Positions 571-54,542 of a stretch of DNA of 64,000 nt are shown here, in pieces. Every line of letters begins with the position of its first letter. The first letter of the stretch is position 1. Made by a program: the position numbers and the translations under genes. The stretch lies in IMG/VR virus record IMGVR_UViG_3300027985_000918, positions 310,001-374,000 of that record, one strand, 5' to 3'. The notes under the pieces are model-generated. The model saw nothing but the letters and a program-made list of their open reading frames with translations. It was not told where the DNA came from and did no database searches.

Positions 571-601
571 TTATCTGAAGTCGGAGTATAGTCAGAAGAA
601 C
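571..601 (-). promoter_or_regulatory. Putative class-I (late) promoter
   Basis: Minus strand GTT-CTTCTGAC-TAT-N13-ATAA, upstream of 281..541. Confidence 0.55.
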
Positions 602-622
602 GCAACCGCTAGGATAAGACCA

Positions 623-1591
623 ATGGCACTGCCACCCCACCTCCAAAAGTTCATGGACACCCCCATCCCCGTGCTCGATGACGGCCACGTTCAGCTTGTG
701 GACGTGATGGGGGACGACATGACCATCGTGAATGCTGCCCGGGTCAGCTACGGCGCCGGGACCAAACGGGTCTCTCAGGACCGGCACCTCATCCGGTACC
801 TCATGCGGCACCGGCATACCACCCCCTTAGAAATGTGCTCGATCACCTTCCGTGTTAGAGTCCCGATGGACACCTGGCGGCAGTGGATCCGGCATCGCAC
901 GGCGTCCGTGAACGAGTACAGCACCCGCTACTCCGAGGCCATCGGCAGTGCCCAGCATGTCACCGAGTGGCGTGCTCAGGCTACCAACAACAAACAAGGG
1001 TCCTCGGGGGTCATCACCGAATGGCCTACCGACGACGTGGGCGTCGGAACCTCCTGGCACGAGCAGTTCCCAGGCACAGACAACTACGAGAACCCCGGCC
1101 AGTACCTCTCCGAACGGGAGGCCGCCCTGCACAAGCTGGCCCGTGAGGTATACGAAGAGCGCCTGGCTTTCGGCGTCTCCCGGGAGGTGGCCCGCAAAGA
1201 CCTGCCGCTGAGCACCTACACTGAAGCGTGGTGGAAGATGGACCTCCACAACCTCTTCCACTTCCTCCGCCTCCGTTTGGACCCCCATGCCCAGCAGGAG
1301 ATCCGGGAGTACGCCAGTGCCATCGCCCAGATTGTGCAGTCGTGGGTGCCTTGGGCTTGGGAGGCATTCGAGGACTACCAGCTCAACGGCCTGTACCTCA
1401 CCCGCTTCGAGGTGGCAGGTCTGAAGGCCCTGCTTTCCGAGCTGGGCAACCTGTCGGGCGGTGATACCGAGGCTGCCACCCTCATGGCGCTCAAAGGTTC
1501 GGGTCTGCCCAAGGGCCGGGAGAAGCAGGAGTTCCAGGATAAACTGGTCAAACTCCTGCCCTGTGTCAGACGTGTTTCAACGAGTACCTGA
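623..1591 (+). CDS. thyX: Flavin-dependent thymidylate synthase ThyX
   Basis: AARVSY, HxTPLE, ThyX signature RHRTASVNEYSTRY, REVARKDLP, LRLDPHAQQEIR. Confidence 0.97.
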   Translation: MALPPHLQKFMDTPIPVLDDGHVQLVDVMGDDMTIVNAARVSYGAGTKRVSQDRHLIRYLMRHRHTTPLEMCSITFRVRVPMDTWRQWIRHRTASVNEYSTRYSEAIGSAQHVTEWRAQATNNKQGSSGVITEWPTDDVGVGTSWHEQFPGTDNYENPGQYLSEREAALHKLAREVYEERLAFGVSREVARKDLPLSTYTEAWWKMDLHNLFHFLRLRLDPHAQQEIREYASAIAQIVQSWVPWAWEAFEDYQLNGLYLTRFEVAGLKALLSELGNLSGGDTEAATLMALKGSGLPKGREKQEFQDKLVKLLPCVRRVSTST

Positions 1592-1917
1592 ACAACCGCC
1601 TCACTTCCTGCCCCCACCTCAAAATCACTTCCCTGCGGGACACCGCCCGAAGCAACGCCAAATCCCGTAAGGTCCCTTTCGACATCCCCCAAGGATCATC
1701 TGCACTGCTTGTGGGATTCCCAGGAAGGGCGGATACCTCCGTCAGCCTTGATCGCAAGATCCCCGAGCTTGGGTATGTTGAGGGGAATGTGGTGCTGGCC
1801 TGCTGGGCCTTCAACCGCATGAGGCAAGATTTCAAACTTGATGTTCTGGTGAACTGCCGCCGGTTCCTCGATCGGCATGAGGCGGAGCAGTGCAAGGCGG
1901 ACTACACCTTTACGTGA
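1561..1917 (+). pseudogene. Degraded HNH-type (homing) endonuclease
   Basis: No start codon. CQTC...AKSRKVPFDI in one frame, KDHLHCLWDSQEGR in the +1 frame (1691-1732), then SLDRKIPELGYVEGNVVLACWAFNRM in the first frame. Confidence 0.6.
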
Positions 1918-2276
1918 TCCAAAGCGCCACCACGGGTGCCATCAAAATAGGACGGTCCTCTGACCCGGAACGTCGCCTCCGAGACCTCCAAACCGGCTCC
2001 CCCTTCCGACTAAAGATCATCCTGGTCATTGAGGGCGGGGGATGGCGGGAGTCCGAACTCCACCAACGGCTTCGGCGCTATCGCTCCCAGGGCACTTACA
2101 AAGGGGAATGGTTCATCGAGCCCGCACTGGGAGAACTCCCCAACGACATCTACGAGCGCCTGGACCTCGATGATGTGAACACCTGGTGGGTGACCGATGC
2201 GGGGGCCGTTCACTTTCCGGGGCCCCCCCAGAATCAGGGATGGGCGCCCGGTTCGGGATGCCACCACCCCCGATAA
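1890..2276 (+). CDS. GIY-YIG family nuclease (T5orf172/MUG113-like)
   Basis: LYVIQ...IKIGRSSDPERRLRDLQTGSP...ESELH...GEWF. Confidence 0.88.
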   Translation: MQGGLHLYVIQSATTGAIKIGRSSDPERRLRDLQTGSPFRLKIILVIEGGGWRESELHQRLRRYRSQGTYKGEWFIEPALGELPNDIYERLDLDDVNTWWVTDAGAVHFPGPPQNQGWAPGSGCHHPR

Positions 2277-2302
2277 TCAGCCTATGGATCCCTCCCCAGT
2301 AG
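2272..2302 (+). promoter_or_regulatory. Putative class-I (late) promoter
   Basis: GAT-AATCAGCC-TAT-N13-GTAG, upstream of 2332. Confidence 0.6.
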
Positions 2303-2331
2303 GCTCTTCAGAAATAAAACGGAGATGAGGC

Positions 2332-2652
2332 ATGAGCACAAACATCAAGGAAATGCGGGCCACCTGGGCTCGGGCGAAGCAGGCTGGCCCGAGGCTCGAT
2401 CCGCAGACCATCGACACCATCCGCCAGTACACTAACCGCAATCTCCACACCGAAAGCCTCATTCTGGTAGCTGAGATCTTCGGGATGGATAGACTGGCAG
2501 AGCAGTACCGGCTCATCCAGAAGTTGGCAGGCACCTTCGGCCACACGCCCTCCGAGTTGATGGACCTCCGCTACCGCATCTCCAAGCCGCTGTACGACAG
2601 GGCCCGGAAGACCCCGTTGCCTACTGGAGAAACCCTCGTAGATCTGCTCTGA
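2332..2652 (+). CDS. Hypothetical protein (possible virion cargo)
   Basis: RBS GGAG/GAGG; has its own class-I promoter; basic N-terminal leader ending in KQA. Confidence 0.7.
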   Translation: MSTNIKEMRATWARAKQAGPRLDPQTIDTIRQYTNRNLHTESLILVAEIFGMDRLAEQYRLIQKLAGTFGHTPSELMDLRYRISKPLYDRARKTPLPTGETLVDLL

Positions 2653-2691
2653 GCTTTACCTTCCTCGGAAGTTCCCCTAAACCCGCCAGCA

Positions 2692-2717
2692 GGTAACCGA
2701 CCCTCTTCGGCAAGTAG
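2692..2717 (+). promoter_or_regulatory. Putative class-II (ECF-like) promoter
   Basis: GGTAAC-N16-GTAG, upstream of the radical SAM gene. Confidence 0.6.
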
Positions 2718-2741
2718 TGCTCCAGCAACATGGAGGAACAT

Positions 2742-3698
2742 ATGCGCCTGGAGAAGATTGGTTTCTACACACTAAGCGACAGCCGAGCCCACTCGGCCTC
2801 GGAAACCTCCCCCTTGATGCGCTGTGAGCTACTGCTCACGGATGCCTGCAATTTCCGATGCCCCTATTGCCGGGGCCTTAAGCCGGACCAGAAGGGCACC
2901 CTCCCTCTGAATCAGGCGATGTACACGGTGCAACTCTGGTGTGACCAGGGGCTCCAGAACGTCCGCTTCTCGGGAGGAGAGCCAACCCTGTACAAGGGTC
3001 TCCCGGAATTGGTCTCCTACTGCAAGACCCGAGGGGTCAATCGAATCGCCGTCTCCACGAACGGCTCCATGCCCCTCCAGCTCTACAAGGGGCTGATCCG
3101 GGCTGGAGTCAACGACTTCTCCATCTCCCTGGATGGGGGCTGCTGCGCTGTGGGCGACGAGATGTCCGGTGGTGTCACCGGCTCCTGGAGCCGAGTGGTT
3201 GAGAACATCCGGCAGATCTCCAAGCTCACCTATGTGACGGTAGGCATGGTCTTCACCGAGGCCAACGTAGAGCAGTGCGTCGAAGCGGTCATGTTCGCAC
3301 GCAGTCTAGGGGTGTCCGATGTGCGAGTCATCCCCTCAGCCCAGTTCAACCAGGCCCTGACGAAACTGGCAGATCTGCCGTCCGAAACCCTGGACACCTT
3401 GCCCATTCTAAAGTACCGCATCCAAAACCTACGGGAGGGACGCCACGTCCGGGGGTTTGACGACCACCCGAAGTGCTGGCTGGCCCTCGACGACATGGCG
3501 GTAGTCCAGGACAAGCACTACCCCTGCATCATTCACCTTCGTGAGGGCGGAGCCCCCATCGGGACAGTCGGCCCTAACATGAGGACGGAGAGAGCCCTCT
3601 GGGTCAGGAACCACGATCCCCACTCCGACCCTATCTGCCGGGCGAACTGCTTGGACGTGTGCCTCGACTACAACCGCAAAGCGGGGGAGGGGCGATGA
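2742..3698 (+). CDS. Radical SAM enzyme
   Basis: CNFRCPYC (CxxxCxxC), FSGGEPTL, STNG, ISLDG; Cys-rich C-terminus. GGAGG RBS before the ATG at 2742. Confidence 0.93.
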   Translation: MRLEKIGFYTLSDSRAHSASETSPLMRCELLLTDACNFRCPYCRGLKPDQKGTLPLNQAMYTVQLWCDQGLQNVRFSGGEPTLYKGLPELVSYCKTRGVNRIAVSTNGSMPLQLYKGLIRAGVNDFSISLDGGCCAVGDEMSGGVTGSWSRVVENIRQISKLTYVTVGMVFTEANVEQCVEAVMFARSLGVSDVRVIPSAQFNQALTKLADLPSETLDTLPILKYRIQNLREGRHVRGFDDHPKCWLALDDMAVVQDKHYPCIIHLREGGAPIGTVGPNMRTERALWVRNHDPHSDPICRANCLDVCLDYNRKAGEGR

Positions 3699-4506: not shown

Positions 4507-4508
4507 GT

Positions 4509-4534
4509 GGTAACTCGGAGATGTCTGCCAGTAG
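4509..4534 (+). promoter_or_regulatory. Putative class-II promoter
   Basis: GGTAAC-N16-GTAG, upstream of 4574. Confidence 0.6.
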
Positions 4535-4573
4535 GTAGGGTGAACTAGAGGACCCTATCACAGGAGAAGTCCC

Positions 4574-5989
4574 ATGAGAAGCATGAACCTGATCACCATC
4601 ACCATCTCCCTCATCCTGGCCTCTTTCCTCGGGGGCTGCCTCGAACCGGAACTGTCCCCCGAGTCCTACAGAACCTTCTCGGAAGGTCCTGCAGACACTA
4701 CCCCCCCGACCCCTGAGGAGGAGGATCTCGACAACCCAGTGGATGAGCCGGACAGCACGGTTCCCGAAGATCCCTTCAAGTACCCCGACCTTGGGGTATG
4801 GCAGCGCCAGCGAGTGCTGTCCTGGGAACCGGGAACCATGGAAGGTTGGAGCCCCGACCTGACAATCCCGGACTGGGCACTCCCGGACCCTGAGGACCCT
4901 GAGGACCCTGAGGACCCCGTTCCCAACCCGGTCCTTCCCCCAGCAGTGGATAGCGGGGACAACAACCCCTGCACCTGGGACTCCGGTGACGAACCCCCCG
5001 TCCCCCGCAGCGGGTTCGTGAGCGACCAGCCGGGCTCCCTGAGAGACCTGGTGGAGATGGCCGATGGATCCTTCATGTTCACGGGATCGAGTGGATTCGC
5101 CGCTGCTACCTACGGGTTCGGCTACCTGAGGGAGTGGGTCTCCGAGTACGAAGGCGACTACGGCGGGGCTATCCTGTCGGAGGGCACAAACCTCGTCAGT
5201 CTCGGACGGACCGATGGCGGAGATCTCCAAATCGTCCGGCAGGGTGGATCCGGGGAACTGCTCTCCTCCACAGTGGTGAATGGAGAGAACCTGCACGTCT
5301 ATGACTCGGTTCCCCACCCCAACGGTTACGTGGTGCTCTACTACCAGGCGGGGACCCAGATGCACTCGGTATCCCTCCTGACCCCGGAGGGAGAGACCAT
5401 GTGGGAACTTCCCCTGCGGAACGCCCACCAGCTCGTCCAGACAGAGAGGGGGTTCGCCGTGGTAGGGGCCTCCGAGGACTGGCTGTCCACATGGGTTCGG
5501 GAATACGACCTCGACGGAACTCTCGTATGGGAAGCCAGCATCGAGATGGGTGGGGTACGCCACCGCCGACTGGCCGTGACAGAGGGTGGGGAGTTCGTGG
5601 TGACGACGGCTTCCTACGAAGAAGCCTACGTATCTTTGCTGAGCCATGAGGGCGGTGTCCTCTGGACCTCGGTCCTCCAGTCCCCGTCGGACCAGTCCTA
5701 CGAGTTCAACGCAGTGGCCGTGGCAGTAGAAGGCATTTACGTGGGGGGACGTCGCTACAACGGGGACAACACCCAGACGGGGGTCCTGTTCCTTCTGGAT
5801 GCCGAGGGATCCCCCTTGGGTTCCTGGGATCTGGCTTCCCCCAACCCCTACAACGACACATCGGTGCTCGGGATTCACCCTCTCCCGGAAGGTGGGGCAG
5901 TAGCCCACGGGGTGTTCGACCACAAGGGGTTCTGGCAAATCGTCAGCCCCCTCGGGTTCTGCACTGAACCCGAGGGTGCCTCCGAATAG
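4574..5989 (+). CDS. Lipoprotein with Pro/Asp/Glu-rich linker and predicted beta-propeller
   Basis: Signal peptide with lipobox FLGGC, (DPE)x3 repeat, DNNPCTWD, repeated xGxxxW blade motifs (PEGETMW, LDGTLVW, HEGGVLW). Confidence 0.8.
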   Translation: MRSMNLITITISLILASFLGGCLEPELSPESYRTFSEGPADTTPPTPEEEDLDNPVDEPDSTVPEDPFKYPDLGVWQRQRVLSWEPGTMEGWSPDLTIPDWALPDPEDPEDPEDPVPNPVLPPAVDSGDNNPCTWDSGDEPPVPRSGFVSDQPGSLRDLVEMADGSFMFTGSSGFAAATYGFGYLREWVSEYEGDYGGAILSEGTNLVSLGRTDGGDLQIVRQGGSGELLSSTVVNGENLHVYDSVPHPNGYVVLYYQAGTQMHSVSLLTPEGETMWELPLRNAHQLVQTERGFAVVGASEDWLSTWVREYDLDGTLVWEASIEMGGVRHRRLAVTEGGEFVVTTASYEEAYVSLLSHEGGVLWTSVLQSPSDQSYEFNAVAVAVEGIYVGGRRYNGDNTQTGVLFLLDAEGSPLGSWDLASPNPYNDTSVLGIHPLPEGGAVAHGVFDHKGFWQIVSPLGFCTEPEGASE

Positions 5990-6946
5990 CTACCGGGGAA
6001 TCGAGACAACCCTGCCTGAAGTCTTCCTGGCCTGATACTCTTCGATGGCCTCCACGATGGCTGCTACCAGAGGATGCCGAACCACGTCCCGGGTTCCAAA
6101 CTCATGCACCCCGATTCCGGGGATATGGGACAGAACGCTCACCATCTCGGACAGCCCCGAAGACTTCCTTTCCAAATCGACCTGGGTCACATCCCCCGTC
6201 ACGATGCACCGGCTATCCTCCCCCAGGCGGGTCAGAAGCATAGTGAGCTGCTGCCAGGTGCAGTTCTGAGCCTCATCTAGCAGAACGAACGCATTGGAGA
6301 GGGTGCGTCCCCGCATGTAAGCCAGAGGAGCGATCTCGATTTTGCCTTCCTTCTTCAGGCGATCTACCCGGGCTTTGCCCATGAGGGTGTTGAGAGCATC
6401 GAACAGCGGCTGAAGGTACGGGTTCACCTTCTCATCAAATGTCCCCGGCAGGAAGCCCAGACTCTCGCCGGCCTCAACTGCCGGGCGGGTAAGGATGATC
6501 CTCTCCACCTCACCAGTGAGGAACGCATGAATGGCGGCGGCCACCGCCAAGTACGTCTTTCCGGTACCCGCAGGACCGATGCCGAAAACGATGTCATGGT
6601 CCCCGATCTTCTCCAGATACTCGGACTGTCCCTCCGTCTTCGGTTCGACGTTGCTGTAGGTGATGGGCTTCCGGCTGCTACGCTTCTTCATGTAGGCATC
6701 CATCATTGCGGAGCTAGTCGAGTGGCCCTGGTGTGCCTTCAGACTAATGAAGTTCACCAGATCCGTGACGTACTCCAGGTCATGCTCGGAGCGAGCGTTC
6801 AGCACGAGCTTCTTGGACTGAACCCGTATGCGGGTGCCAAGCCGCTGGAGAAAACGAATCGTGGCCCAGTCTGTCCCACAGAACAGGGCCAGTACGGACT
6901 CGTCCTGGAATTTGAATACACGCTTGAAGGGGAAAGGTTCGTTCAT
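5990..6946 (-). CDS. phoH: PhoH family ATPase
   Basis: [55 protein letters not shown]. Confidence 0.97.
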
Positions 6947-6970
6947 GGACAGGCCCCCACTCTAGTTCAC

Positions 6971-7001
6971 CCACCTTAGAGTGGATGATAGCGGCCCTAC
7001 C
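6971..7001 (-). promoter_or_regulatory. Putative class-I (late) promoter
   Basis: GGT-AGGGCCGC-TAT-N13-GTGG, upstream of phoH. Confidence 0.55.
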
Positions 7002-7062
7002 GAACAGAGAGAAGCCCCGAGAGGACGGAGGGAGTTGCAGGTGGGCGGGAGGTGTCAGCCTG

Positions 7063-9552: not shown

Positions 9553-9586
9553 GGGTACTTCTCCGTTGGGTGTGGTTCCTGGGAGC

Positions 9587-9612
9587 TTACCCTTTTTTCA
9601 AATTTGGTTACC
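9587..9612 (-). promoter_or_regulatory. Putative class-II promoter (divergent pair, leftward)
   Basis: Minus strand GGTAAC-N16-GTAA, upstream of the vWA gene. Confidence 0.6.
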
Positions 9613-9617
9613 CCCTA

Positions 9618-9644
9618 GGTAACAACTCTCACATTGAGGGGTAG
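9618..9644 (+). promoter_or_regulatory. Putative class-II promoter (divergent pair, rightward)
   Basis: GGTAAC-N17-GTAG, upstream of 9674. Confidence 0.6.
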
Positions 9645-9673
9645 GGGAACCGCACCCCTAAGGAGGAAAAGAG

Positions 9674-10033
9674 ATGATCAACTTGACTATGCACAAGGCC
9701 ACCCCAGATCAGAGTGAAGCAGGAGTGACCGACCTTCCAGCCGAAAAGGTCGAGAAGGTCAAGTGCCTCCTCAACTTCCAGAATCTCCCCACATCGGAAG
9801 ATGTGGAAGAGAGAGCCGCTCGGCTGGCGGAGCTGGCAGCAGAAGAAGGGGCAACCTCTGCCATGATCGGGGGGGCTCCCTTCCTCATGGCACCCCTCGC
9901 ACAGCATCTGAAGCAGAGCCACATCACGCCCTTCTTCGCCTTCTCCCGACGGGAGGTCGTCGAAGGTGAGGGGGTGAACGGTGAGGTCGTGAAAACCAGC
10001 GTGTTCCGGCACGCCGGTTTTGTGGCAGCCTAG
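9674..10033 (+). CDS. Small Rossmann-like protein resembling Csx20/Csx15 (candidate ring nuclease)
   Basis: NLTMHKATPDQ, AMIGGAP, FAFSRRE...GEVVKTSVFRHAGF resemble Csx20-type motifs; strong AGGAGG RBS. Confidence 0.55.
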   Translation: MINLTMHKATPDQSEAGVTDLPAEKVEKVKCLLNFQNLPTSEDVEERAARLAELAAEEGATSAMIGGAPFLMAPLAQHLKQSHITPFFAFSRREVVEGEGVNGEVVKTSVFRHAGFVAA

Positions 10034-12447: not shown

Positions 12448-12807
12448 TCATCCCGCCAGCCCCAAGGCTTCCCGCATCGACGGAGCCCTACGGCCCATCA
12501 ACTCGGACATCGAGCTGACCACCTTACGGGCGGCACTCTTCACCGGATTGTCCTTAGCCAAGATGGTCTGGAAGACTCCGCTGTTGATCTCATCCACATC
12601 GTGGATGGTCAGACCCTCGGGGTCCTCGAACCCCAACGCCGTCCTGGTCACGACCTGAGGAGACTGCGGCTGCGGCTGGGGATAGGGCTCCACCTGGCGG
12701 TAACCCTGCCCCTTGGCAGCATCGGCAGCAACGAGTTTTGCACGGTAGTCGGCCACACTGCCGACCCTGTAGGTATCCACTTCCGGGACCGGAATGCGCT
12801 TCTCCAT
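12448..12807 (-). CDS. Hypothetical late protein
   Basis: Start MEKRIP with GGAGG RBS, downstream of a class-I promoter. Confidence 0.6.
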   Translation of the reverse strand: MEKRIPVPEVDTYRVGSVADYRAKLVAADAAKGQGYRQVEPYPQPQPQSPQVVTRTALGFEDPEGLTIHDVDEINSGVFQTILAKDNPVKSAARKVVSSMSELMGRRAPSMREALGLAG

Positions 12808-12835
12808 TGGGGGATGCCTCCTTGTAAGCACACGC

Positions 12836-12866
12836 ACACCAATGGATTTTCTATAGGCCAATTATT
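12836..12866 (-). promoter_or_regulatory. Putative class-I (late) promoter
   Basis: AAT-AATTGGCC-TAT-N13-GTGT. Confidence 0.6.
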
Positions 12867-12970
12867 GGCTGGTGTTCCGAACCCCCCGGGATCACAAAAC
12901 AAAACCGTCGGTCCCGCACCTCAAGGAGAGGCGTATCGGACTTAGGCCTCTTGGGGGAACCCGTCAAGGA

Positions 12971-14359: not shown

Positions 14360-14362
14360 TGG

Positions 14363-14578
14363 TCAAGCTCCTGCAGCTTGGCAGCGATCGATAATCGAGG
14401 TCACGAAACCCCGGACGACACGAAGGCGGGATAGCACCTCAGCCTTCTCATCGTCAGCCTGGATAAAGTCCAGCAGAAAGTCAGGTCCGTCGGGGAATGC
14501 CCGGAAAGAGTTGACATCGACGGTCGGGATCCCCTCTCCGCCGACTACGTTAACCTCTACGTCGATTCGACCTGGCAT
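14363..14578 (-). CDS. Small hypothetical protein (DUF3467-like)
   Basis: VNSFRAF...FLLDF...VLSRLRV; apparent paralog of 24369..24632. Confidence 0.6.
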   Translation of the reverse strand: MPGRIDVEVNVVGGEGIPTVDVNSFRAFPDGPDFLLDFIQADDEKAEVLSRLRVVRGFVTSIIDRCQAAGA

Positions 14579-14586
14579 CCCCTACC

Positions 14587-14838: not shown

Positions 14839-14869
14839 GATGTTCTCCACCAGCCCATTGGGGGCGGCT

Positions 14870-14900
14870 TTACCACAAGGAGGCCTATAGTCAGAACACC
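14870..14900 (-). promoter_or_regulatory. Putative class-I (late) promoter
   Basis: GGT-GTTCTGAC-TAT-N13-GTAA; shares TTCTGACTATA with the 571-601 site. Confidence 0.65.
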
Positions 14901-14910
14901 ATACCGACGA

Positions 14911-14945: not shown

Positions 14946-14965
14946 AGAGGTGGGGGGAGTCGGGA

Positions 14966-15901: not shown

Positions 15902-15913
15902 CGGACTCTCCTA

Positions 15914-16813: not shown

Positions 16814-16828
16814 GTTGCAGTCTCCTTC

Positions 16829-18827: not shown

Positions 18828-18890
18828 CGGGCGAGCCTCTACTCGCCTATCAGGTCCGGGCGAGCCTCTACTCGCCTATCAGGTCCGGGC
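18828..18890. repeat. Perfect 29-bp tandem repeat (2.2 copies), each unit containing a hairpin
   Basis: CGGGCGAGCCTCTACTCGCCTATCAGGTC twice plus CGGGC; GGCGAG/CTCGCC stem in each unit. Confidence 0.95.
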
Positions 18891-18905
18891 TATAGGCTCT
18901 CTATC
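18876..18905 (-). promoter_or_regulatory. Putative class-I (late) promoter
   Basis: GAT-AGAGAGCC-TAT-N12-ATAG. Confidence 0.6.
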
Positions 18906-20094
18906 AAACCCCGCCCTTAGCCCCCAGGCCCAGGTTGGCGAGGATGGCGAACGCTGGGTTCCCCCCACCCGTACCACTGGACACGAAAATCTCCTTCACC
19001 GAGCCGAAGGTAGTGATCTCTCCCCCTGCGGGGATTTCCACATAGGGCTGGGACCACCCAAAGCTCGCTGCCAGCACAACTCCCCCCGCATCCAAGTTAC
19101 GAACCGTGATCGAAGTGGTAGGCCGGGGGAGTACCACCACATAGGGGGGGCCGTTCGGGTCCGTCAGCGCCCGGTTGAACTGGTCGGGGGTATCCCCCGA
19201 AACCACGCCGAAATCGGGAGATGTCCCCGAGATCACTACAGTCCCCTCTGGCATCCACATGACAGGAAGGTTCGGAATCACCAAAGTGGGGCCCAGTACG
19301 GGAAGCCCTACGTTGGCGGGGAGAGCCAAAGCTGCTCCCGAGAGAGTAACTCGGGCACCTGCCGTGTTCTCCGCCAACGTGACCAGCTCCCCGTCCGTGC
19401 CGAGCACCGAGGCAGTAATGGTCACCGTGTCCGAAGTCCCTCCTGCGTTATCAGCAGCCACAGTCACCCCAACGGGTACGGCTGCCAGCAACAGAGCCTG
19501 GGAAGCGGGATCGTTGATTGCAGCCACCAAACTGGTGGCGGTGGCGGTAGCAGACCCCGAAGCAGCCACATCGTCGAACTGCTGGAGGGCCGGGTTGGCC
19601 GGTCCGGGATTCACTGCTGTGAAAGGAACGCCTGCGATAGTGATGATGTCGCCTGCGGCACAACCGCCCAGGATCTGAGCAGTCCCGTCAGCGTACCCCT
19701 GAATCACCAGGGGTACCCCGTTCCGGACCTGCTGAACAGCCACGTACATCTGACCATTGGGGGCGGCGATGCCGTACTCCGCCAGGTCAAACAGGGCTCG
19801 GGTCGTCCCCCGCATAGACTCGTCGATGACCCCAAAACCCTTACGGCGAAGTCCCGGGCTAATGAACTTCTGTCCCTTGGTGACCTGGAACATCATCTGC
19901 CGGTTAGCAATCGTCCCACCTACACCAGAGCCCGCCGGGTTGCCGTACAGGTCGTCGGGGTTGGGGGAGCCCCATACCCGATAAGCCGTGACCTCGGGGT
20001 CATTCCAAATCTGGATGTCAATCCGGCGATCCGTTCGCAGGACCAACCCCGCAAATTGGCCCCAAGGACCGATATCGGAGTGGTACAGGCTCAT
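18904..20094 (-). CDS. Virion structural protein
   Basis: Contains the same GDIITIAGVPFTA...LVAAINDPASQALL...GGTSDTVTITA module as 16829..18802. Confidence 0.7.
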   Translation of the reverse strand: MSLYHSDIGPWGQFAGLVLRTDRRIDIQIWNDPEVTAYRVWGSPNPDDLYGNPAGSGVGGTIANRQMMFQVTKGQKFISPGLRRKGFGVIDESMRGTTRALFDLAEYGIAAPNGQMYVAVQQVRNGVPLVIQGYADGTAQILGGCAAGDIITIAGVPFTAVNPGPANPALQQFDDVAASGSATATATSLVAAINDPASQALLLAAVPVGVTVAADNAGGTSDTVTITASVLGTDGELVTLAENTAGARVTLSGAALALPANVGLPVLGPTLVIPNLPVMWMPEGTVVISGTSPDFGVVSGDTPDQFNRALTDPNGPPYVVVLPRPTTSITVRNLDAGGVVLAASFGWSQPYVEIPAGGEITTFGSVKEIFVSSGTGGGNPAFAILANLGLGAKGGV

Positions 20095-22923: not shown

Positions 22924-22947
22924 GTTGCAGCCCTCCAGTGGCAGACT

Positions 22948-22978
22948 TCACTCAGGGGCCGCCGATAGGCGAGCAACC
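22948..22978 (-). promoter_or_regulatory. Putative class-I (late) promoter
   Basis: GGT-TGCTCGCC-TAT-N13-GTGA. Confidence 0.6.
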
Positions 22979-22981
22979 GAA

Positions 22982-26469: not shown

Positions 26470-26526
26470 GTTGCTCCCCCTGCTGGTATTCCTGGAGGGT
26501 CTACCCTTTCAGCTCTCCTACGGGGG

Positions 26527-26552
26527 CTACCGGAAGCCGAAAGTTCGTTACC
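26527..26552 (-). promoter_or_regulatory. Putative class-II promoter
   Basis: Minus strand GGTAAC-N16-GTAG. Confidence 0.6.
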
Positions 26553-26701
26553 CCCTAGGCCCCTCACCGCCTATAGGCTGATCCTGATACTCCGGCTATC
26601 CGTTGCGGGTAGAGGGAACGCCGGGGTCATCGGTTTCGATGTCAGGCAGCACCCCGCTTCTGGTGCTCACTGGCCTGCAAAACGACTTCCAGGGAGTCAC
26701 G

Positions 26702-30643: not shown

Positions 30644-30714
30644 GATTTCCTCCGTTCTCCTTGTTTACAGGAGTTGGGTGATACAGAGCCGCCACCCACC
30701 TCGGATGGCAGCGC

Positions 30715-30747
30715 CTACTGATATGTGGGGTGCATAGGCACTCTATT
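30715..30747 (-). promoter_or_regulatory. Putative class-I (late) promoter for decoration + MCP
   Basis: AAT-AGAGTGCC-TAT-N12-TCAGTAG; the variant downstream element is shared with 35309-35338. Confidence 0.6.
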
Positions 30748-30761
30748 GAGCAACCCCCCAG

Positions 30762-35243: not shown

Positions 35244-35308
35244 GTCTTCGTGCTCCTGTTCCATCAAGACCTCAACCAAGTATCAGCTCGGGCATTCCAA
35301 GCCCTCCG

Positions 35309-35338
35309 CTGATATGGTCAAGGTATAGACGAAAGATT
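35309..35338 (-). promoter_or_regulatory. Putative class-I (late) promoter
   Basis: AAT-CTTTCGTC-TAT-N12-TCAG, followed by a TATCAGC...GCTGATA leader hairpin. Confidence 0.55.
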
Positions 35339-35362
35339 GAGAATCAGTGGTTCAAAACCCGT

Positions 35363-40483: not shown

Positions 40484-40501
40484 CGGGTGTTCCTCCAGTC
40501 T

Positions 40502-40532
40502 CTACCTTCGGCAGAGCTATAAACAAATCACA
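40502..40532 (-). promoter_or_regulatory. Putative class-I (late) promoter
   Basis: TGT-GATTTGTT-TAT-N13-GTAG, upstream of the giant protein. Confidence 0.6.
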
Positions 40533-42435
40533 GCGCCGGTGATGGCCTGTGCCCCTTGAAGCGGGCCTCCTTCCCGGACACTGGCTTAGTCAGGCCACTC
40601 TCCAGCTCACCCTGAAGCTCGGGATCAATGTGGGTGTCGCTCGCCAGAGCTTCCTCAGCGGCCTCTCGGATAGCTCTCTTGATGGCTTCCTGGAAAGTAT
40701 CCTTGAGGAAACGGTGAATCTCGTTCTGCTGTACTGAGCCAAACCGGGACATGCCCTCTTCCTTCGGTTTGGTATACTTCAGACCCAGGACATCGGCCAC
40801 TCGCTGGACAGCGTCGGAGGACTCCGCCAAGGCGTCCCCGACACGGCTGTAGACCGCCCGCAAGACTTCATTGAACGTAGCGTCCTGGAGTGTAAAAGTG
40901 TCCCTCTCCAGCTTCTCTCGGACGGTGTCGGCATCAAGGTTCAGCAAATCCAGAATGGTCTCGATGTCCAAACTCCCCTTCTGGTAGAGATTGAACAATG
41001 TGTCGAATGTCTCCTGGTTATCCCGCAAAGCCAAACGGGTGAACGACAGCCTCGGATGGATGACCACCTCTTCGCCGTCTTCGTCGTACTCGATGAACCC
41101 CATGCGGCGGCACATCGGCTCCAAAAGTTGCCGGTCTACGAAATCCTGAAGCAGCTCACGCAGCAACAGATAGCGGACGTTGATCACCTCCAAGTGGATG
41201 CGGTCCCCACTGTAGCTCGACTCACCGGACAGCAAAGATTCAGTGACCCCGAGACCGGCATAAAGCTGCCGGTCAGTGAGGTCGTACTCGGAGGACAGGT
41301 CCAGCAAGCGGGAGTCCGCCCCCCCGCCCCGCTCTTCCCAGTTGACCTGGAAGTTCGTGATGACACTATAGTCCGGGTCCTGAAGAGCCAGATCCACCTG
41401 GTCCCGCAGCTCTTCCGTCTGCTCGGCGTTCATGTCCTCCGCCCAGATGATGCGGTAGGGGGTCATGTGCCGGGAGGCGATGGATGTCTGGGCCTGGCGG
41501 AGTTTATCCCGGAACACCAGGACTCGGAGACACCGCTGAAGGATAGACTTCCCCCGAGCCTCGTACTGACTCTTCTTGCGGGCCAGGTAGTGGCAGAAGC
41601 TGCCCGCCTCAGGGGTGGTGTTCAAGGGGATGTTCTCACCCCGGAGGACGTAGTCCACAACCTCGGTAGGCATGGACTCGACCACCTCTCGGGCTCGGAG
41701 ATCTCCCTGAGTAGCCCTCTCGATGATGGCCTTGGTCTTGCTATCGGGAATCAGCTCAATGAGGCGCTTGTCCGTGAAGGGGAACGCCTCCATCTGAATC
41801 TGCTCGGGGGGAAGAACTCGGAGAGCCGACCAGCCCTTGTAATTCTTCTTCACCCACTGGACCATCCTCTTTCGGGCATCCGGGTAAGGCCGCTCTTCCT
41901 CTACCAGGGACCCGTCAGCAGCAATCTCACGATATGTCTCATGAGTCACCTCCCGGGGCATATCTGGACTCGTGTCCTCTGCGAACACGAATACCTCCCC
42001 GACGAGGTAATATTCGTGGACCACCTCCAAAAGACGGTGCAGCAGACCAATATAGCGAACCCACCGCTCACAGAACCTCATGGACGCCTCAGCCAGCTTC
42101 TTGTTCTTGGCCTTAGGCTTGCGGAGGCGTAGCTTGGAAAGGGGGAGTTCCCCGTGCAGATCGATGGCCTGACCCACAAAGGGGTCGTTGTCGTAAAAGA
42201 AGCGGAAATAGTTCCGCATCTCATCTACGGACTGAGGCAGCTCCAGGAAATCTGGGCTCAGCTCGGGACTGTAGAAGTTGCCCCCCGAGCCAACCATGGC
42301 CCCACCCGTAGCAGGGTAGGCCATCTTGAGGCGGGCTGTTCCGGTAACGAGCTTGCCGGGTTTGCCTACCTTGACCTTGTCCCGCTCGGGAAGGGTAGCC
42401 ACCTTGACTGTATGCTTGGGATCGTTCTTCTTCAT
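40528..42435 (-). CDS. Portal protein
   Basis: FYDNDPFVGQAIDLHGELP, GEVFVF, YEARGKSILQRC, LYAGLGV; downstream of terminase. Confidence 0.82.
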   Translation of the reverse strand: MKKNDPKHTVKVATLPERDKVKVGKPGKLVTGTARLKMAYPATGGAMVGSGGNFYSPELSPDFLELPQSVDEMRNYFRFFYDNDPFVGQAIDLHGELPLSKLRLRKPKAKNKKLAEASMRFCERWVRYIGLLHRLLEVVHEYYLVGEVFVFAEDTSPDMPREVTHETYREIAADGSLVEEERPYPDARKRMVQWVKKNYKGWSALRVLPPEQIQMEAFPFTDKRLIELIPDSKTKAIIERATQGDLRAREVVESMPTEVVDYVLRGENIPLNTTPEAGSFCHYLARKKSQYEARGKSILQRCLRVLVFRDKLRQAQTSIASRHMTPYRIIWAEDMNAEQTEELRDQVDLALQDPDYSVITNFQVNWEERGGGADSRLLDLSSEYDLTDRQLYAGLGVTESLLSGESSYSGDRIHLEVINVRYLLLRELLQDFVDRQLLEPMCRRMGFIEYDEDGEEVVIHPRLSFTRLALRDNQETFDTLFNLYQKGSLDIETILDLLNLDADTVREKLERDTFTLQDATFNEVLRAVYSRVGDALAESSDAVQRVADVLGLKYTKPKEEGMSRFGSVQQNEIHRFLKDTFQEAIKRAIREAAEEALASDTHIDPELQGELESGLTKPVSGKEARFKGHRPSPAL

Positions 42436-48298: not shown

Positions 48299-48978
48299 GC
48301 CGTCCTCCTTGCCGAGTACCGAGCTGCAAGGCGAGATGCCTGCACATGGATATTACCGTCGGCAGAGGCCAGTCTGGGCTTTCCGTCGGTCACCTTATCA
48401 TCGTCCCGATCCGCCTCGGACTCTTCCTGCTCCGCCCACTCCTCCGGGTCCTCCCGAATTTCCTCCACTTCGTCCATGATCTGCTTGACCTCATCCCGAT
48501 CACGGGGGTCTCCACCAGAGTCATCGACCCGAGGATTCCAATGGACGGCCTGCATCTCGTCGTACATCGAGTCGGAAACAGCGCTCAACGCCTCCAGGAC
48601 GTTCGTGTAGAGCTTACGGATGTCCTTAATTGTCAGAATATAACCCTTCCCACCAATGGACCCGTCGGGGCTGATCCGCTGACTCTTGATCTTGTTGAAA
48701 ATGGTGTAGGCACTCTGGGCATGCCCCAGTGCCATCAAAGTAGCTCTCAGGGACTTGGCCAGGGGCTCCAGGTTCTTGGGGTTGAACTCGTAATCGGGGT
48801 CAATCATCCGCTCAGATGCCCCGGCGGGATTCCACGCCCATTCCTTGGAGTCCCCCCCACGATCCTTGATGAAGCGGACTTCACCGGCCGTGCGGTCCAT
48901 GGCGGCACGTTTCATATGTGCCGAAGCCACCCGGCGGATGGCTTCGGCGTCAAGCTGTGGAGTCCTCGTCGTGGACAT
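48295..48978 (-). CDS. Hypothetical virion protein with tags at both ends
   Basis: RRVASAHMKRAA...RTA at the N-terminus; RLAARY...RRTA at the C-terminus. Confidence 0.72.
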   Translation of the reverse strand: MSTTRTPQLDAEAIRRVASAHMKRAAMDRTAGEVRFIKDRGGDSKEWAWNPAGASERMIDPDYEFNPKNLEPLAKSLRATLMALGHAQSAYTIFNKIKSQRISPDGSIGGKGYILTIKDIRKLYTNVLEALSAVSDSMYDEMQAVHWNPRVDDSGGDPRDRDEVKQIMDEVEEIREDPEEWAEQEESEADRDDDKVTDGKPRLASADGNIHVQASRLAARYSARRTA

Positions 48979-48996
48979 ACTGTGGAACCTCCAACC

Positions 48997-49026
48997 CTAC
49001 TGAGCGAAACCTATAAACCAAATACC
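48997..49026 (-). promoter_or_regulatory. Putative class-I (late) promoter
   Basis: GGT-ATTTGGTT-TAT-N12-GTAG. Confidence 0.65.
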
Positions 49027-49034
49027 CGCCGGAA

Positions 49035-52357: not shown

Positions 52358-53041
52358 TCACACCACCACGTCGTAGCCAACATCAACGGTTTCGGCTGGC
52401 TGCAGCTCGATGCCGAGGGCAACCGTGAACCCGGTCTTGGTCTTACTGGTGACCCTAACGGGAAAAAACCCTGAAGGCTCCAGAAGAACCCGGTAAGTCG
52501 CCGTCGGGAGAGCCGACGTGAATGTCACCGTTTTTGAGCTATTGTCCGCCTGAGCGAACGTCAGAGTTCCCCCCAGAGCGCTCGCTGCAGATGTCGAGAC
52601 CAGAATCGCCCAGTCCACATCCTTCTCATCCCCGACAGCCCCGTAAGTTGAAGGGGCCACCAAGAGGAAGGACGTGATGGTCTTGTTCTCGACCCGCATG
52701 GGGGTTCCGTCGGGGGTTGTTACCTGAACCCGGTAATCGGTGTTGTTCAGAAGCCCGGGGGCCACCGCTACCGTGCGGGAGGCCTGCCCGTTGAACGTCT
52801 CAGTGCCGCTGGTCACGGACGACTCGGTGGTCAGGAGCTGGGCCAGATCCACCGAGTCGTACATGTCCTGGAGGACCTCTTCGGGCACCCCCGTCATCGA
52901 GTCTGTAATCAGCCCCCGAGGCCCACGAATATTGCGAACCGACGATGCGGACTGCTCATTGATGACGATGTCCCACACGTACTCCTGTCCCCCTCGGGAG
53001 GACTTGTATGTGAGGACTGTCTGGACTCGGGAGAGGGCCAC
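52358..53041 (-). CDS. Virion fibre or lectin-like protein
   Basis: Two xxYRV...KTxTxF beta modules; GGAGG RBS. Confidence 0.6.
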   Translation of the reverse strand: MALSRVQTVLTYKSSRGGQEYVWDIVINEQSASSVRNIRGPRGLITDSMTGVPEEVLQDMYDSVDLAQLLTTESSVTSGTETFNGQASRTVAVAPGLLNNTDYRVQVTTPDGTPMRVENKTITSFLLVAPSTYGAVGDEKDVDWAILVSTSAASALGGTLTFAQADNSSKTVTFTSALPTATYRVLLEPSGFFPVRVTSKTKTGFTVALGIELQPAETVDVGYDVVV

Positions 53042-53055
53042 AGATCACCTCCGGC

Positions 53056-54141
53056 TCAGCTCCAGACCGAGAACTGGTACTTGTACTTGATGCCGCCCTG
53101 GTCCATCTTCGCCTGGAGCTGCTTCCCCGTCATGCGCTTGATGTCGTCCTGGTTGGCCTTGGCCCACAGGAACATCTTGCGGGCGCCCGCAGGACTGGTA
53201 CTCACCAACTTGGTGTAGTGGGGGTCTCCACCGAAGGCGTACTCATCAAGCTGCTTGTCGGTGTAGCCATTGTTGAGGGTGACGTCGAACGAGGTCCACT
53301 CAGCCTTGATATAGAACTCATCCTTCGCCTTGATCTCGACGGGGGCATAGTCCACCGGCTCAACCTGGAGGTAGTTGACATCCTCTTCTTTAGGCATCCA
53401 ACGACCCGTGAGGGACTGGGAAACCCAATCGGGGTACTCCAAACCCTCTTTATCCAGATCCTTGAACGCCTTCTCGATGGCCTTCTTGAGGCCAGCAGCA
53501 GAGGCTTCGGCGGTCTGGGAGGCGTTGGGCTTCCAGTCCCGCTCCAGGTTCTCGATCATGAAGTAGTCGTAGATCTTCCCCAACGGTCCCGTCCCGTTGA
53601 GACTCTGGATCTGACCACCAATGCCAAACGTGAACCGCTTGAGGCTCCGCTTACCCTTCTGGGGCAGTTCCTCGATGACGACGTAGTGCCGGGGGTGCCC
53701 GGAGATACGGATACGGGTCTTGTCGCCGACGAGAATCTTGTCCCACTTCTCACGGGCGATTCGAGCAGCGGCCCACCGCCCCATGAAGTCCTCATCGGCC
53801 CTGGCTCCCTCAAACTCCCGCCATGCCTGCTCGGCAGCCTTGCCGGTCAGAATGCTCTTGGTCTGGGGGTAGTAGAGGACCCGGTCACCCGCCCGGAAAG
53901 GGATTCCCTTCTCATCCACGCCGGGGCGCCGGGCGTTGATCCAGCGGGGGTCTCCCCCCTGACCACGGCTCCGGCCGGACCAGCCGGCCGACTTATCGTC
54001 GTTGCCCTCAACATACCCGAGCCCCGGGTCCTCCGCTGACTCCACGTTGAGGTGGGCGTGCTTCCGAAGGAGAGGAACCAGGTGCTTGCGGATGGACGGC
54101 ACGTCCACTGCCAACTTGCTCAGCTTGCTGTAGAGATTCAT
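53056..54141 (-). CDS. Hypothetical multi-segment protein with N-terminal KLA-P tag
   Basis: MNLYSKLSKLAVDVPSIRKHLVPLLRKHA; internal KSA, RWA and RIA sites. Confidence 0.72.
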   Translation of the reverse strand: MNLYSKLSKLAVDVPSIRKHLVPLLRKHAHLNVESAEDPGLGYVEGNDDKSAGWSGRSRGQGGDPRWINARRPGVDEKGIPFRAGDRVLYYPQTKSILTGKAAEQAWREFEGARADEDFMGRWAAARIAREKWDKILVGDKTRIRISGHPRHYVVIEELPQKGKRSLKRFTFGIGGQIQSLNGTGPLGKIYDYFMIENLERDWKPNASQTAEASAAGLKKAIEKAFKDLDKEGLEYPDWVSQSLTGRWMPKEEDVNYLQVEPVDYAPVEIKAKDEFYIKAEWTSFDVTLNNGYTDKQLDEYAFGGDPHYTKLVSTSPAGARKMFLWAKANQDDIKRMTGKQLQAKMDQGGIKYKYQFSVWS

Positions 54142-54172
54142 GTTGTTACCTGCCTGGAACTACTGGGTTAGG

Positions 54173-54481
54173 TTACCAAACCCCTGTTGTCTCAAAACCC
54201 CGCCTCTCGAACCAGCTCTGAAGAGACAGCATAGCTTCCCGATTCGAGGACCACAGAGTCACACAGTCGAAACTCTCTCGGATGCCGAGGTCTGGGATGG
54301 TAGGCACCCCCGCCATCGCCACCTTGCCATCTCTCTGGGATCGGAGCAGCCCGGGGATGTAGCGGTAATCCTTCGCCCCGTACAAGACCGAGAATCGAAA
54401 CTCAGCGGTGGCGATGCGGCTGACCCACCTCCGGGCCACTCGCCTTGCCATGACGATCCTCTTCTCGTTATCCTGGGACAT
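54173..54481 (-). CDS. Hypothetical protein, first gene of the late operon
   Basis: RRVARRWVSRIA leader; AGGAG RBS. Confidence 0.7.
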   Translation of the reverse strand: MSQDNEKRIVMARRVARRWVSRIATAEFRFSVLYGAKDYRYIPGLLRSQRDGKVAMAGVPTIPDLGIRESFDCVTLWSSNREAMLSLQSWFERRGFETTGVW

Positions 54482-54512
54482 GCTGCTCCTACGGTAAAAC
54501 CGGGGCTTTGCT

Positions 54513-54542
54513 CTACCGATAGCCTCACATAGGCGATCTACC
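54513..54542 (-). promoter_or_regulatory. Putative class-I (late) promoter heading the morphogenesis operon
   Basis: GGT-AGATCGCC-TAT-N12-GTAG. Confidence 0.65.

What the first reader, a model, noticed from the sequence alone, without database searches (positions are those of the whole stretch)
571..54542. Phage-specific tripartite late promoter RRT-N8-TAT-N12/13-RTR at 12 sites
Seen: the same spaced motif, correctly oriented, lies just upstream of genes at 571, 2272, 6971, 12836, 14870, 18876, 22948, 30715, 35309, 40502, 48997 and 54513. The T nine bases before TAT is invariant. Two sites have TCAG as the last element. Most sites head structural or lysis genes, and two directly follow terminators. 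The layout is not sigma70 (-35/-10, 17 bp) and not T4 TATAAATA. Inference: a late promoter class read by a phage-encoded factor.
Basis: partly seen in the sequence, partly recalled or inferred. Interest (0 to 1): 0.75.

Follow-up and report, generated by a model that had tools for sequence, protein, structure and literature searches.

The report
Conserved three-box late promoter, huge phages
The motif is real: a three-part DNA signal (CGGTAG, 5 bases, CCTATAG, about 10 bases, GTAG-like box) sits just upstream of virion and other genes in this 402-kb vent phage and at the same genes in related huge phages, so it is very probably a phage-specific promoter class, although no transcription start has been mapped.

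Summary
All 12 named sites are intergenic and point at the next gene, and I found a 13th.

- **Refined motif:** U box CGGTAG (T fixed 9 bases before TAT), core gCCTATAG, and D box cAGTAGAG about 14-16 bases after the core's T.
- **Specificity in this genome:** a three-block matrix gives 22 hits at 18 bits or more in the 402-kb genome. All are intergenic and gene-directed, and none lies in the 91% that is coding.
- **Replication in a relative:** trained on this genome only, the matrix finds 16 of 20 hits intergenic and gene-directed in a relative with about 50% protein identity. Ten orthologous gene pairs share the site.
- **Wider conservation:** four more huge-phage contigs (159-536 kb) keep it at two tested orthologous positions.
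- **Genes headed:** tail sheath, baseplate and head-module genes, and nine obligatory transcription-unit starts.
- **Second class:** GGTAAC-N14-GAGTAGG dominates the other half of the genome.
- **Likely reader:** no phage RNA polymerase was found. The phage encodes sigma-like proteins and a NusG-like protein.

Best reading: a late promoter for host polymerase redirected by phage factors. The start site, the timing and the factor are inferred, not shown.

The parts
566..602 (-). Class B site (weak, about 16 bits): U CGTTCT, core TGACTATAC, D AGATAAAA. Lies 49 nt upstream of gene 281-541(-) in a divergent intergenic region.
   Evidence: The ortholog in relative G001 carries a TATAC...GGTAGG site. 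The gene has a weak holin match.
2271..2307 (+). Class B site: U CGATAA, core AGCCTATGG, D CAGTAGGC. Upstream of gene 2332-2652(+).
   Evidence: (24.6 bits)
6966..7002 (-). Class B site (weak core CCGCTATCA, good U CGGTAG). Upstream of PhoH gene 5990-6946(-).
12831..12867 (-). Class B site: U CAATAA, core GGCCTATAG. Upstream of gene 12448-12807(-).
   Evidence: (19.2 bits)
14865..14901 (-). Class B site: U TGGTGT, core TGACTATAGG, D TGGTAAAG. Upstream of gene 14587-14838(-) and just after a hairpin terminator.
   Evidence: 22.8 bits. The ortholog in G001 keeps a site.
18870..18906 (-). Class B site: U TGATAG, core AGCCTATAGC. Upstream of gene 16829-18802(-). The D region lies in a perfect 29-bp tandem repeat (18828-18890).
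   Evidence: (22.2 bits). The G001 ortholog has the best-scoring site of that genome (27.0 bits).
22943..22979 (-). Class B site: U CGGTTG, core CGCCTATCGG, D GAGTGAAG. Upstream of gene 22516-22923(-).
   Evidence: 25.3 bits. The G001 ortholog site scores 24.4 bits.
26551..26587 (-). Both face gene 25204-26469(-) in a divergent intergenic region.
30712..30748 (-). Class B site: U CAATAG, core TGCCTATGC, D CAGTAGGC. Upstream of gene 29948-30643(-), directly after terminator 30798-30768.
   Evidence: (23.1 bits)
35303..35339 (-). Class B site: U CAATCT, core CGTCTATAC, D CAGCGGAG. Upstream of gene 34608-35264(-).
   Evidence: (21.1 bits). Nearly the same three boxes lie before the G001 ortholog.
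40497..40533 (-). Class B site: core TGTTTATAGC, D AGGTAGAG. It fills the 44-nt gap between the portal gene (40528-42435) and the 1706-aa gene 35363-40483(-). The ribosome-binding site starts 8 nt after the T of D.
   Evidence: (19.2 bits)
48991..49027 (-). Class B site: U GGGTAT, core GGTTTATAGG, D CAGTAGGG. Upstream of gene 48295-48978(-). The ribosome-binding site starts 7 nt after the T of D.
   Evidence: (22.7 bits). Conserved before the ortholog in G001, L044, L048, L046 and L069.
54507..54543 (-). Class B site: U CGGTAG, core CGCCTATGTG, D CGGTAGAG. Upstream of gene 54173-54481(-), immediately downstream of the sigma-region-4 gene.
   Evidence: 26.0 bits. Conserved at the same place in G001, L044, L048, L046 and L069.
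54554..55180 (-). Candidate reading factor (inferred): a 208-aa protein with a sigma-70 region 4 domain, a second helix-turn-helix domain and a disordered tail with a hydrophobic-acidic end.
   Evidence: Pfam Sigma70_r4_2 39.8 bits. PHROG sigma factor families. AF2 model pLDDT 81; residues 34-102 match sigma region 4 of many sigmas with Z 9-11. 982 homologs, on contigs up to 536 kb.
55276..55821 (-). NusG-like protein (NGN + KOW). Candidate elongation or antitermination partner (inferred).
   Evidence: Pfam NusG 23.3 bits and KOW. PHROG transcription antiterminator. Synteny clamp loader / NusG-like / sigma-r4 gene is kept in relatives.
2690..2720 (+). Class A promoter (context): GGTAAC-N14-CAAGTAGT, before gene 2742-3698(+).
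4507..4537 (+). Class A promoter (context), before gene 4574-5989(+).
9584..9647 (.). Two divergent class A promoters (context): 9584-9614(-) for gene 7063-9552 and 9617-9647(+) for gene 9674-10033.
26524..26554 (-). Class A promoter (context), immediately downstream of the class B core at 26575, before gene 25204-26469(-).

Best explanation
The sites are a genuine, phage-specific promoter class ('class B'). It drives mostly virion (late) genes of a 402-kb tailed phage from a hydrothermal-vent metagenome.

Anatomy, in the direction of transcription:
- U box CGGTAG, with its T fixed 9 bases before TAT.
- Core gCCTATAG.
- D box c(A/G)GTAG(A/G)G, whose T lies mostly 14-16 bases after the T of TAT.
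- The start codon lies 37-66 bases after the T of TAT at 19 of the 22 sites.

Proposed mechanism (inferred): the host's multisubunit RNA polymerase is redirected by phage-encoded sigma-family proteins. U and core are one helical turn apart at a rigid distance, so they look like the docking site of a factor with two helix-turn-helix domains. The best candidate is the conserved sigma-region-4 protein encoded at 54554-55180.

The TATAG core most likely acts as the -10-like melting element. Transcription would then start about 12-14 bases after its T, at the purine just before GTAG. That puts D in the first transcribed bases. D has the same sequence as the -10 box of the genome's other promoter class (class A, GGTAAC-17 bp-TAGGTG). 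It may therefore be a sigma-contact or pause box, possibly used to load the neighbouring NusG-like protein.

Shown: the motif, its specificity, orientation, conservation and gene association. Inferred: the timing, the factor, the start site and the role of D.
For: Specificity:
- GCCTATAG occurs 10 times in intergenic DNA and never in coding DNA, which is 91% of the genome.
- The three-block matrix gives 22 hits at 18 bits or more, all intergenic and gene-directed. At 16 bits or more the counts are 29 gene-directed, 5 coding and 0 wrong-way.

Independent replication:
- A matrix trained on this genome alone finds 16 of 20 hits (16 bits or more) intergenic and gene-directed in relative G001, whose proteins are about 50% identical.
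- Ten orthologous gene pairs carry the site in both phages.
- The site after the sigma-r4 gene and the site before the 48295-48978 ortholog are also kept in contigs of 223, 159, 536 and 357 kb.

Promoter rather than internal signal:
- Nine of 49 strand-run heads carry it (one of them together with class A), including the head of a 53-gene block.
- It follows a strong terminator.

Gene class:
- It heads tail sheath, baseplate and head-module genes.
- Class A heads DNA ligase, a PARP-like enzyme, VWA and OmpA-like proteins, and lies mostly at 5-183 kb. Class B lies mostly at 169-394 kb.

Start-site inference:
- In class A the ribosome-binding site mostly starts at or beyond +16 from the T of D and never before about +13. 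That fits D as a -10 box with a start near +12.
- In class B it begins only 7-10 nt after that T at several sites. This arrangement is conserved in relatives, so transcription must start upstream of that point.

Factors:
- A sigma-r4 protein, a NusG-like protein and a second divergent sigma are present.
- No RNA polymerase was found.

Boxes tested separately:
- U is independently significant.
- D scored with the class A matrix is enriched after class B cores (p 9e-7). With loosely defined cores the result is p 3.5e-4 against coding DNA and 0.06 against other intergenic DNA.
Against: - No transcription start is mapped. No RNA run holds this DNA.
- The matrix was trained on intergenic sites, so the counts in this genome are partly circular. 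The G001 scan and the plain-word counts are not.
- D is the weakest box, with variable spacing (13-20). In one relative it coincides with the ribosome-binding site.
- Not all downstream genes are structural (PhoH, several unknowns). Two good sites lie in the 'class A' half of the genome, at 44 kb and 57 kb.
- The sigma-r4 protein has no region 2, so it cannot be the whole sigma. Its link to the motif rests on adjacency, co-conservation and geometry only.
- The gene calls are my own simple caller, although the callers of the public records place the relatives' sites between genes too.
Confidence: 0.6

Rival explanations
1. Same promoter class, different geometry. D is the -10 element, as in class A, with the start about 12 nt after its T. 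U plus core, at about -40 to -23, form the binding site of an activator that replaces the missing -35 contact. This would resemble sigma appropriation at T4 middle promoters (MotA box at -30) or a class II activator.
For: D resembles the class A -10 box and is enriched at a fairly fixed distance. Class A has textbook sigma geometry, a 17-bp spacer. U and core are rigidly spaced one helical turn apart, which suits a two-domain DNA binder.
Against: At several sites the ribosome-binding site starts 7-10 nt after the T of D: window 40521 and 49015, genome 304265, G001 61778, 8521 and 124889, and L044 and L048. On this model it would be cut out of the transcript. The arrangement is conserved across phages. 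Class A never shows this.
Confidence: 0.2
2. Promoter for a phage-encoded single-subunit (T7-like) RNA polymerase. The core CTATAG equals positions -5 to +1 of T7, SP6 and K11 promoters (from memory), U falls at about -16 to -11, and transcription starts at the G after TATA.
For: The core is identical to the T7-group initiation region, and the conserved span of about 20 bp has the right size (the promoter consensus is from established knowledge).
Against: A six-frame search for PF00940 finds nothing. The T7 motif C pattern is absent, and the only motif-B-like hit is in a polymerase-A-like protein. The giant unknown proteins match no polymerase in PHROGs or PDB. The phage instead carries sigma-family and NusG-like genes, which act on multisubunit polymerase.
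Confidence: 0.05
3. Not an initiation signal but a protein-binding or elongation signal. It could be an operator for a regulator, or an ops-like loading or pause site for the NusG-like protein. U and D both read CGGTAG, the core of the E. coli RfaH ops element GGCGGTAGnnTG (from memory). It could also be an RNA processing site.
For: A NusG-like gene is conserved next to one of the sites. The GTAG box occurs up to three times per site. Many sites lie inside long same-strand gene blocks.
Against: Nine sites stand at strand-run heads and in divergent intergenic regions, where a promoter is required and nothing else conserved is present. One follows a strong terminator. Short gaps of 44-60 nt contain nothing else. 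There is no Rfam match.
Confidence: 0.1
4. Compositional artefact: TA-rich words are simply rare in GC-rich coding DNA and pile up between genes.
For: Many TA-containing words are several-fold enriched in intergenic DNA.
Against: GCCTATAG is about tenfold above the expectation from intergenic base composition alone (my own estimate, about 1 expected; counts). Orientation is 22 of 22 toward genes. T at -9 is tied to gene-directed cores only. The site is conserved before orthologs in five other genomes.
Confidence: 0.02

Closest known systems
T4 late promoters (TATAAATA at -10; gp55 + gp33 + sliding clamp gp45)
   Same: Both are phage-specific TATA-like cores without a -35 hexamer, present in many copies before virion genes. 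Both are read by host polymerase with phage sigma-like pieces. gp33 is a sigma-region-4 mimic with a variable linker and a hydrophobic-acidic clamp-binding end (PMC2988020). The protein here has a sigma-4 domain and a disordered tail ending in LILD, VLD or similar, and its gene sits one gene (the NusG-like gene) away from a clamp loader.
   Different: The core is CCTATAG in a GC-rich setting, flanked by two further conserved boxes. gp33 does not read DNA sequence, whereas here an upstream box is conserved. No gp55 or gp33 homolog was identified, and clamp dependence is untested.
T4 middle promoters (MotA box at -30 plus sigma-70 -10; AsiA/MotA sigma appropriation)
   Same: The -35 hexamer is replaced by a different box closer to the -10, bound by a phage activator, while a -10-type box is shared with another promoter class.
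   Different: The position of the ribosome-binding sites argues that D is not the -10 here. MotA and AsiA homologs were not sought.
Phage sigma cascades (Bacillus phage SPO1 gp28, then gp33/34; sigma-carrying 'group 2' jumbo phages, PMC7824862)
   Same: There are successive promoter classes with unusual boxes, phage-encoded sigma-family proteins, no phage polymerase, and spatial separation of the classes on the genome.
   Different: The consensus sequences are different. Class B has three boxes and no 17-bp -35/-10 geometry.
T7 / SP6 / K11 single-subunit polymerase promoters
   Same: CTATAG matches -5 to +1, and there is a further specificity region about 10 bp upstream.
   Different: No such polymerase gene was found. 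A further conserved box lies 10 bp downstream.
Sigma-28 (FliA) promoters, TAAA-N15-GCCGATAA (from memory)
   Same: The core GCCTATAG matches the long sigma-28 -10 box GCCGATAA at 6 of 8 positions. The sigma-4 domain's best sequence matches in PDB are SigF and FliA.
   Different: Nothing is conserved 15 bp upstream. U lies only 3 bp from GCC.
RfaH ops element / lambda Q-type promoter-proximal loading sites
   Same: A CGGTAG-like box probably lies in the first transcribed bases. It is -10-like, as sigma-dependent pause elements are. A specialised NusG paralog is encoded nearby.
   Different: Nothing is shown about pausing or loading. The box also occurs upstream of the core, and the sites number in the dozens rather than one per operon.

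Membership tests
Sigma-70-type promoter (-35 TTGACA / 16-18 bp / -10 TATAAT) | Two hexamers resembling the consensus, 16-18 bp apart | tested here: not met
   No sigma-70-like site in window 12.5-32 kb, against 4.0 expected in shuffles. In class B nothing conserved lies 17 bp upstream of either TATAG or D.
T4-type late promoter | TATAAATA core at -10 with no upstream element | tested here: not met
   The core is gCCTATAG, and a conserved U box lies at a fixed -12 from it.
T4-type late promoter | gp55, gp33 and gp45 homologs encoded by the phage | tested here: inconclusive
   A sigma-4-domain protein with a gp33-like tail and a clamp loader are present. No region-2-only sigma was identified, and only selected proteins were scanned.
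T7-group single-subunit polymerase promoter | Conserved block of about 20 bp ending in CTATAG at the start site | tested here: met
   The U box and the CCTATAG core span about 20 bp. The start site itself is unknown.
T7-group single-subunit polymerase promoter | A single-subunit RNA polymerase gene in the genome | tested here: not met
   PF00940 six-frame search found nothing. The T7 motif C pattern is absent. Giant unknown proteins have no match. These are negative results from sequence methods only.
Sigma-54 promoter (GG-N10-GC at -24/-12) | GG and GC 12 bp apart, start to start | tested here: not met
   GG of U and GC of the core are 8 bp apart.
Sigma-28 promoter | TAAA about 15 bp upstream of GCCGATAA | tested here: not met
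   The core resembles the -10 part, but positions -22 to -18 are unconserved.
RfaH-type ops / NusG-paralog loading site | Element lies in the transcribed leader and causes a pause where the paralog binds | not testable with these tools
   Only the CGGTAG similarity and the presence of a NusG-like gene are known.
Functional promoter (any class) | Primary transcript 5' ends just downstream | not testable with these tools
   No RNA run holds this DNA.
Functional promoter (any class) | Enriched, gene-directed and conserved upstream of orthologous genes | tested here: met

The most novel reading that the evidence does not exclude
A whole clade of uncultivated huge phages (contigs of 140-536 kb, from many habitats) may share a late-transcription system not yet described. 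Its parts would be a conserved cassette (clamp loader, NusG paralog, and a sigma-region-4-only protein with two DNA-binding domains and a gp33-like clamp-binding tail) and a three-box promoter.

In this reading the two-domain protein docks on U and core. The TATAG core is melted. The transcribed, -10-like D box holds the complex for loading of the NusG paralog. Late transcription would thereby be coupled to the sliding clamp or to antitermination.
Probability: 0.15. Interest if true: 0.8.

Novelty: new variant of a known kind. Interest (0 to 1): 0.55.

Why it matters
Huge phages are known almost only from metagenomes, and nothing is known about how this group times its genes. This work gives two promoter classes that can be recognised from sequence alone. 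One is shared across at least six genomes, together with a conserved set of sigma-like and NusG-like genes.

That allows several things:
- Split such genomes into transcription units and probable temporal classes.
- Assign unknown genes to the virion module.
- Pick a small set of proteins and 40-bp DNA fragments for direct biochemical tests.
- Obtain new orthogonal promoter and factor pairs for GC-rich hosts.

Tried and rejected
- **Matrix iteration on whole-genome hits** drifted into a family of about 69-bp coding repeats at 87-110 kb and was abandoned.
- **EM seeded with the core** drifted to the ribosome-binding site.
- **Megablast of 20 kb against the phage collection:** no match.
- **RNA evidence:** no run holds this DNA. 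Only relatives' proteins are seen in unrelated metatranscriptomes.
- **Complex prediction of the sigma-r4 protein with a 42-bp site:** not folded, no verdict. It is not evidence either way.
- **One mistaken family-search call** failed for being too short, and one scan exceeded the size limit.
- **Phage polymerase searches** with PF00562, PF00940, motif greps, PHROGs and PDB sequence searches of the 3900-, 1969- and 1748-aa proteins were all negative. Three D-x-DGD matches are what chance predicts.
- **Clamp-binding tails:** a look for clamp-binding-like C-termini in other proteins gave a few acidic-hydrophobic tails, but none on the DNA polymerase, and no conclusion.
- **Rfam:** nothing in the window.
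- **Sigma-54 and sigma-28 geometries** were considered and rejected on spacing.
- **One relative's contig** had no DNA available.

Full report
**Context.** The window is bases 310,001-374,000 of a 402,383-bp virus record with 107-bp terminal repeats, about 60% G+C. DNA runs that hold it come from hydrothermal-vent metagenomes. No gene caller was available, so I wrote a codon-usage caller. It gives 405 genes and 91% coding. The window holds the large terminase (43059-45056), portal (40528-42435), a head protease (32394-33938), PhoH (5990-6946), a clamp loader, a NusG-like gene and a sigma-region-4 gene, nearly all on the minus strand.

**The observation.**
- Eight of the twelve named sites match literally. 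The other four carry the same core and the T at -9 but deviate in an outer triplet.
- All twelve are intergenic and point at the next gene. Eleven are on the minus strand.
The site there precedes PhoH on the minus strand.
- I found a thirteenth site at 26551-26587.
- A 13-pair terminator with a T-run ends ten bases before the site at 30712-30748.

**What the motif is.** Aligning the sites on TAT shows three blocks.
- The core is gCCTATAG.
- D is c(A/G)GTAG(A/G)G, with its T mostly 14-16 bases after the T of TAT.

Evidence that it is specific:
- The plain word GCCTATAG occurs ten times between genes and never in coding DNA. CCTATAG is 42-fold enriched between genes.
- A three-block matrix gives 22 hits at 18 bits or more in the whole genome, all intergenic and all directed at the next gene. 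At 16 bits the counts are 29 directed, 5 coding and 0 wrong-way.
- With a loose core pattern and no matrix, T at -9 is tied to gene-directed intergenic cores (53% against 19% and 25%).
- D, scored with a matrix from the other promoter class, is enriched after the cores, though it is the weakest block.

**A second class.** Unbiased word counts and EM found a larger family, GGTAAC-N14-GAGTAGG (class A). This is a GGTAAC box, a 17-bp spacer and a TAGGTG-type box, which is classical sigma geometry.
- It precedes about 77 genes, mostly between 5 and 183 kb, including a DNA ligase and a PARP-like enzyme.
- Class B lies mostly between 169 and 394 kb. It precedes the tail sheath, three baseplate-like proteins and head-module genes.
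- Of 49 strand-run heads, where a promoter is obligatory, 20 carry class A and 9 carry class B (one carries both). These include the heads of blocks of 53, 15 and 13 genes.

**Conservation.**
- A 143-kb contig (G001) is syntenic with the window at roughly 30-89% protein identity.
- A matrix trained on the first genome only finds 16 of 20 hits there between genes and gene-directed. Ten orthologous gene pairs carry the site in both genomes.
- The sigma-region-4 protein has 982 homologs, many on contigs of 200-536 kb, within a conserved order: clamp loader, NusG-like, sigma-r4.
- In four such contigs (223, 159, 536 and 357 kb; 51-63% G+C in the three measured) the site directly after that gene and the site before the ortholog of 48295-48978 are both present. 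GGT(A) at -11 to -8, TAT and a GTAG box at +16 are kept.

**How it probably works.** No phage RNA polymerase was detected:
- six-frame Pfam searches were negative;
- catalytic-motif greps were negative;
- PHROGs and PDB searches of the giant proteins gave no polymerase match.

The phage has a divergent 373-aa sigma-like protein. It also has the 208-aa protein whose residues 34-102 are a sigma region 4 domain (Z 9-11), followed by a second helix-turn-helix. And it has a NusG-like protein. Host polymerase redirected by phage factors is therefore the economical reading. This matches what is described for sigma-carrying jumbo phages (PMC7824862).

Where transcription starts can only be inferred:
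- In class A the ribosome-binding site mostly starts at or beyond +16 from the T of the GTAG box and never before about +13, once mis-called starts are set aside. This is what is expected if that box is the -10 element.
- In class B the ribosome-binding site begins only 7-10 bases after that T at several sites, and the arrangement is kept in relatives.
- So D cannot be the -10 element there. The start must lie upstream, most simply 12-14 bases after the T of TATAG, at the purine before GTAG.
- On this view TATAG is the melting element, as TATAAATA is in T4 (established knowledge; T4 factors in PMC2988020). U plus core, one helical turn apart at a rigid distance, form a docking site for a two-domain DNA binder. 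D is a transcribed, -10-like box.

The rival geometry (D as -10, with U and core as an activator site, like the T4 MotA box) remains possible. A T7-like reading is suggested by the CTATAG identity but lacks an enzyme.

**Limits.**
- There are no RNA data.
- The complex prediction with DNA was not run by the tool.
- The matrix counts in the first genome are partly circular.
- Gene calls are mine.
- 'Late' rests on gene content and map position only.

**Verdict.** The interpretation as a phage-specific, probably late, promoter class is supported. The motif and its conservation across a clade of huge phages appear undescribed in the two papers on huge and jumbo phages that I read from the searches. 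It belongs to a known kind of system.

Noticed in passing
window 2690-2720(+), 4507-4537(+), 9584-9614(-), 9617-9647(+), 26524-26554(-); about 77 genes genome-wide: A second, larger promoter class: GGTAAC, 14 bases, GAGTAGG. This is sigma-like geometry with a 17-bp spacer. It shares the GTAG box with the reported motif and dominates the left half of the genome.
   Followed up: yes
window 54554-57256(-) and loci L044-L048, L069: The gene order clamp loader / NusG-like / sigma-region-4 protein, followed by a class B site, is conserved in huge-phage contigs up to 536 kb. The sigma-r4 family has 982 homologs and a variable tail ending in hydrophobic-acidic residues, reminiscent of T4 gp33 and gp55 clamp-binding ends.
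   Followed up: partly
window 18828-18890: A perfect 29-bp tandem repeat (2.2 copies) directly downstream of the TATAG core of site 18876. It duplicates the GATAGG/GAGTAGAGG boxes, and each copy can form a GGCGAG/CTCGCC hairpin.
   Followed up: partly
genome 86,137-86,687, about 83,600 and about 392,400-392,650 (outside the window); window about 26,540: Clusters of AAACTTT / AAAGTTT (and GAAACTT) words in a few long intergenic regions, including the region upstream of the 373-aa sigma-like gene. They look like operator repeats near TTGAC-type boxes.
   Followed up: no
window 35363-40483(-): A 1706-aa protein combining a 2H phosphoesterase (LigT-like) domain with a type IB topoisomerase catalytic core. 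It lies in the head module just after the portal gene, and its ortholog in G001 is 2806 aa.
   Followed up: no
genome about 86.7-110 kb (outside the window): A 49-gene plus-strand block full of about 69-bp coding repeats (23-residue units with WW-x-NG and HR-x-DGPA). They captured my first matrix iteration.
   Followed up: no
window 12500-32000: No sigma-70-type promoter match at all, where shuffles give 4.0 +/- 2.2.
   Followed up: no
   Followed up: yes
genome 265,186-276,888(-) (outside the window): A 3900-aa protein with no match in PHROGs or PDB sequences. Several other unknown proteins of 1000-2100 aa lie in the same minus-strand virion region.
   Followed up: partly
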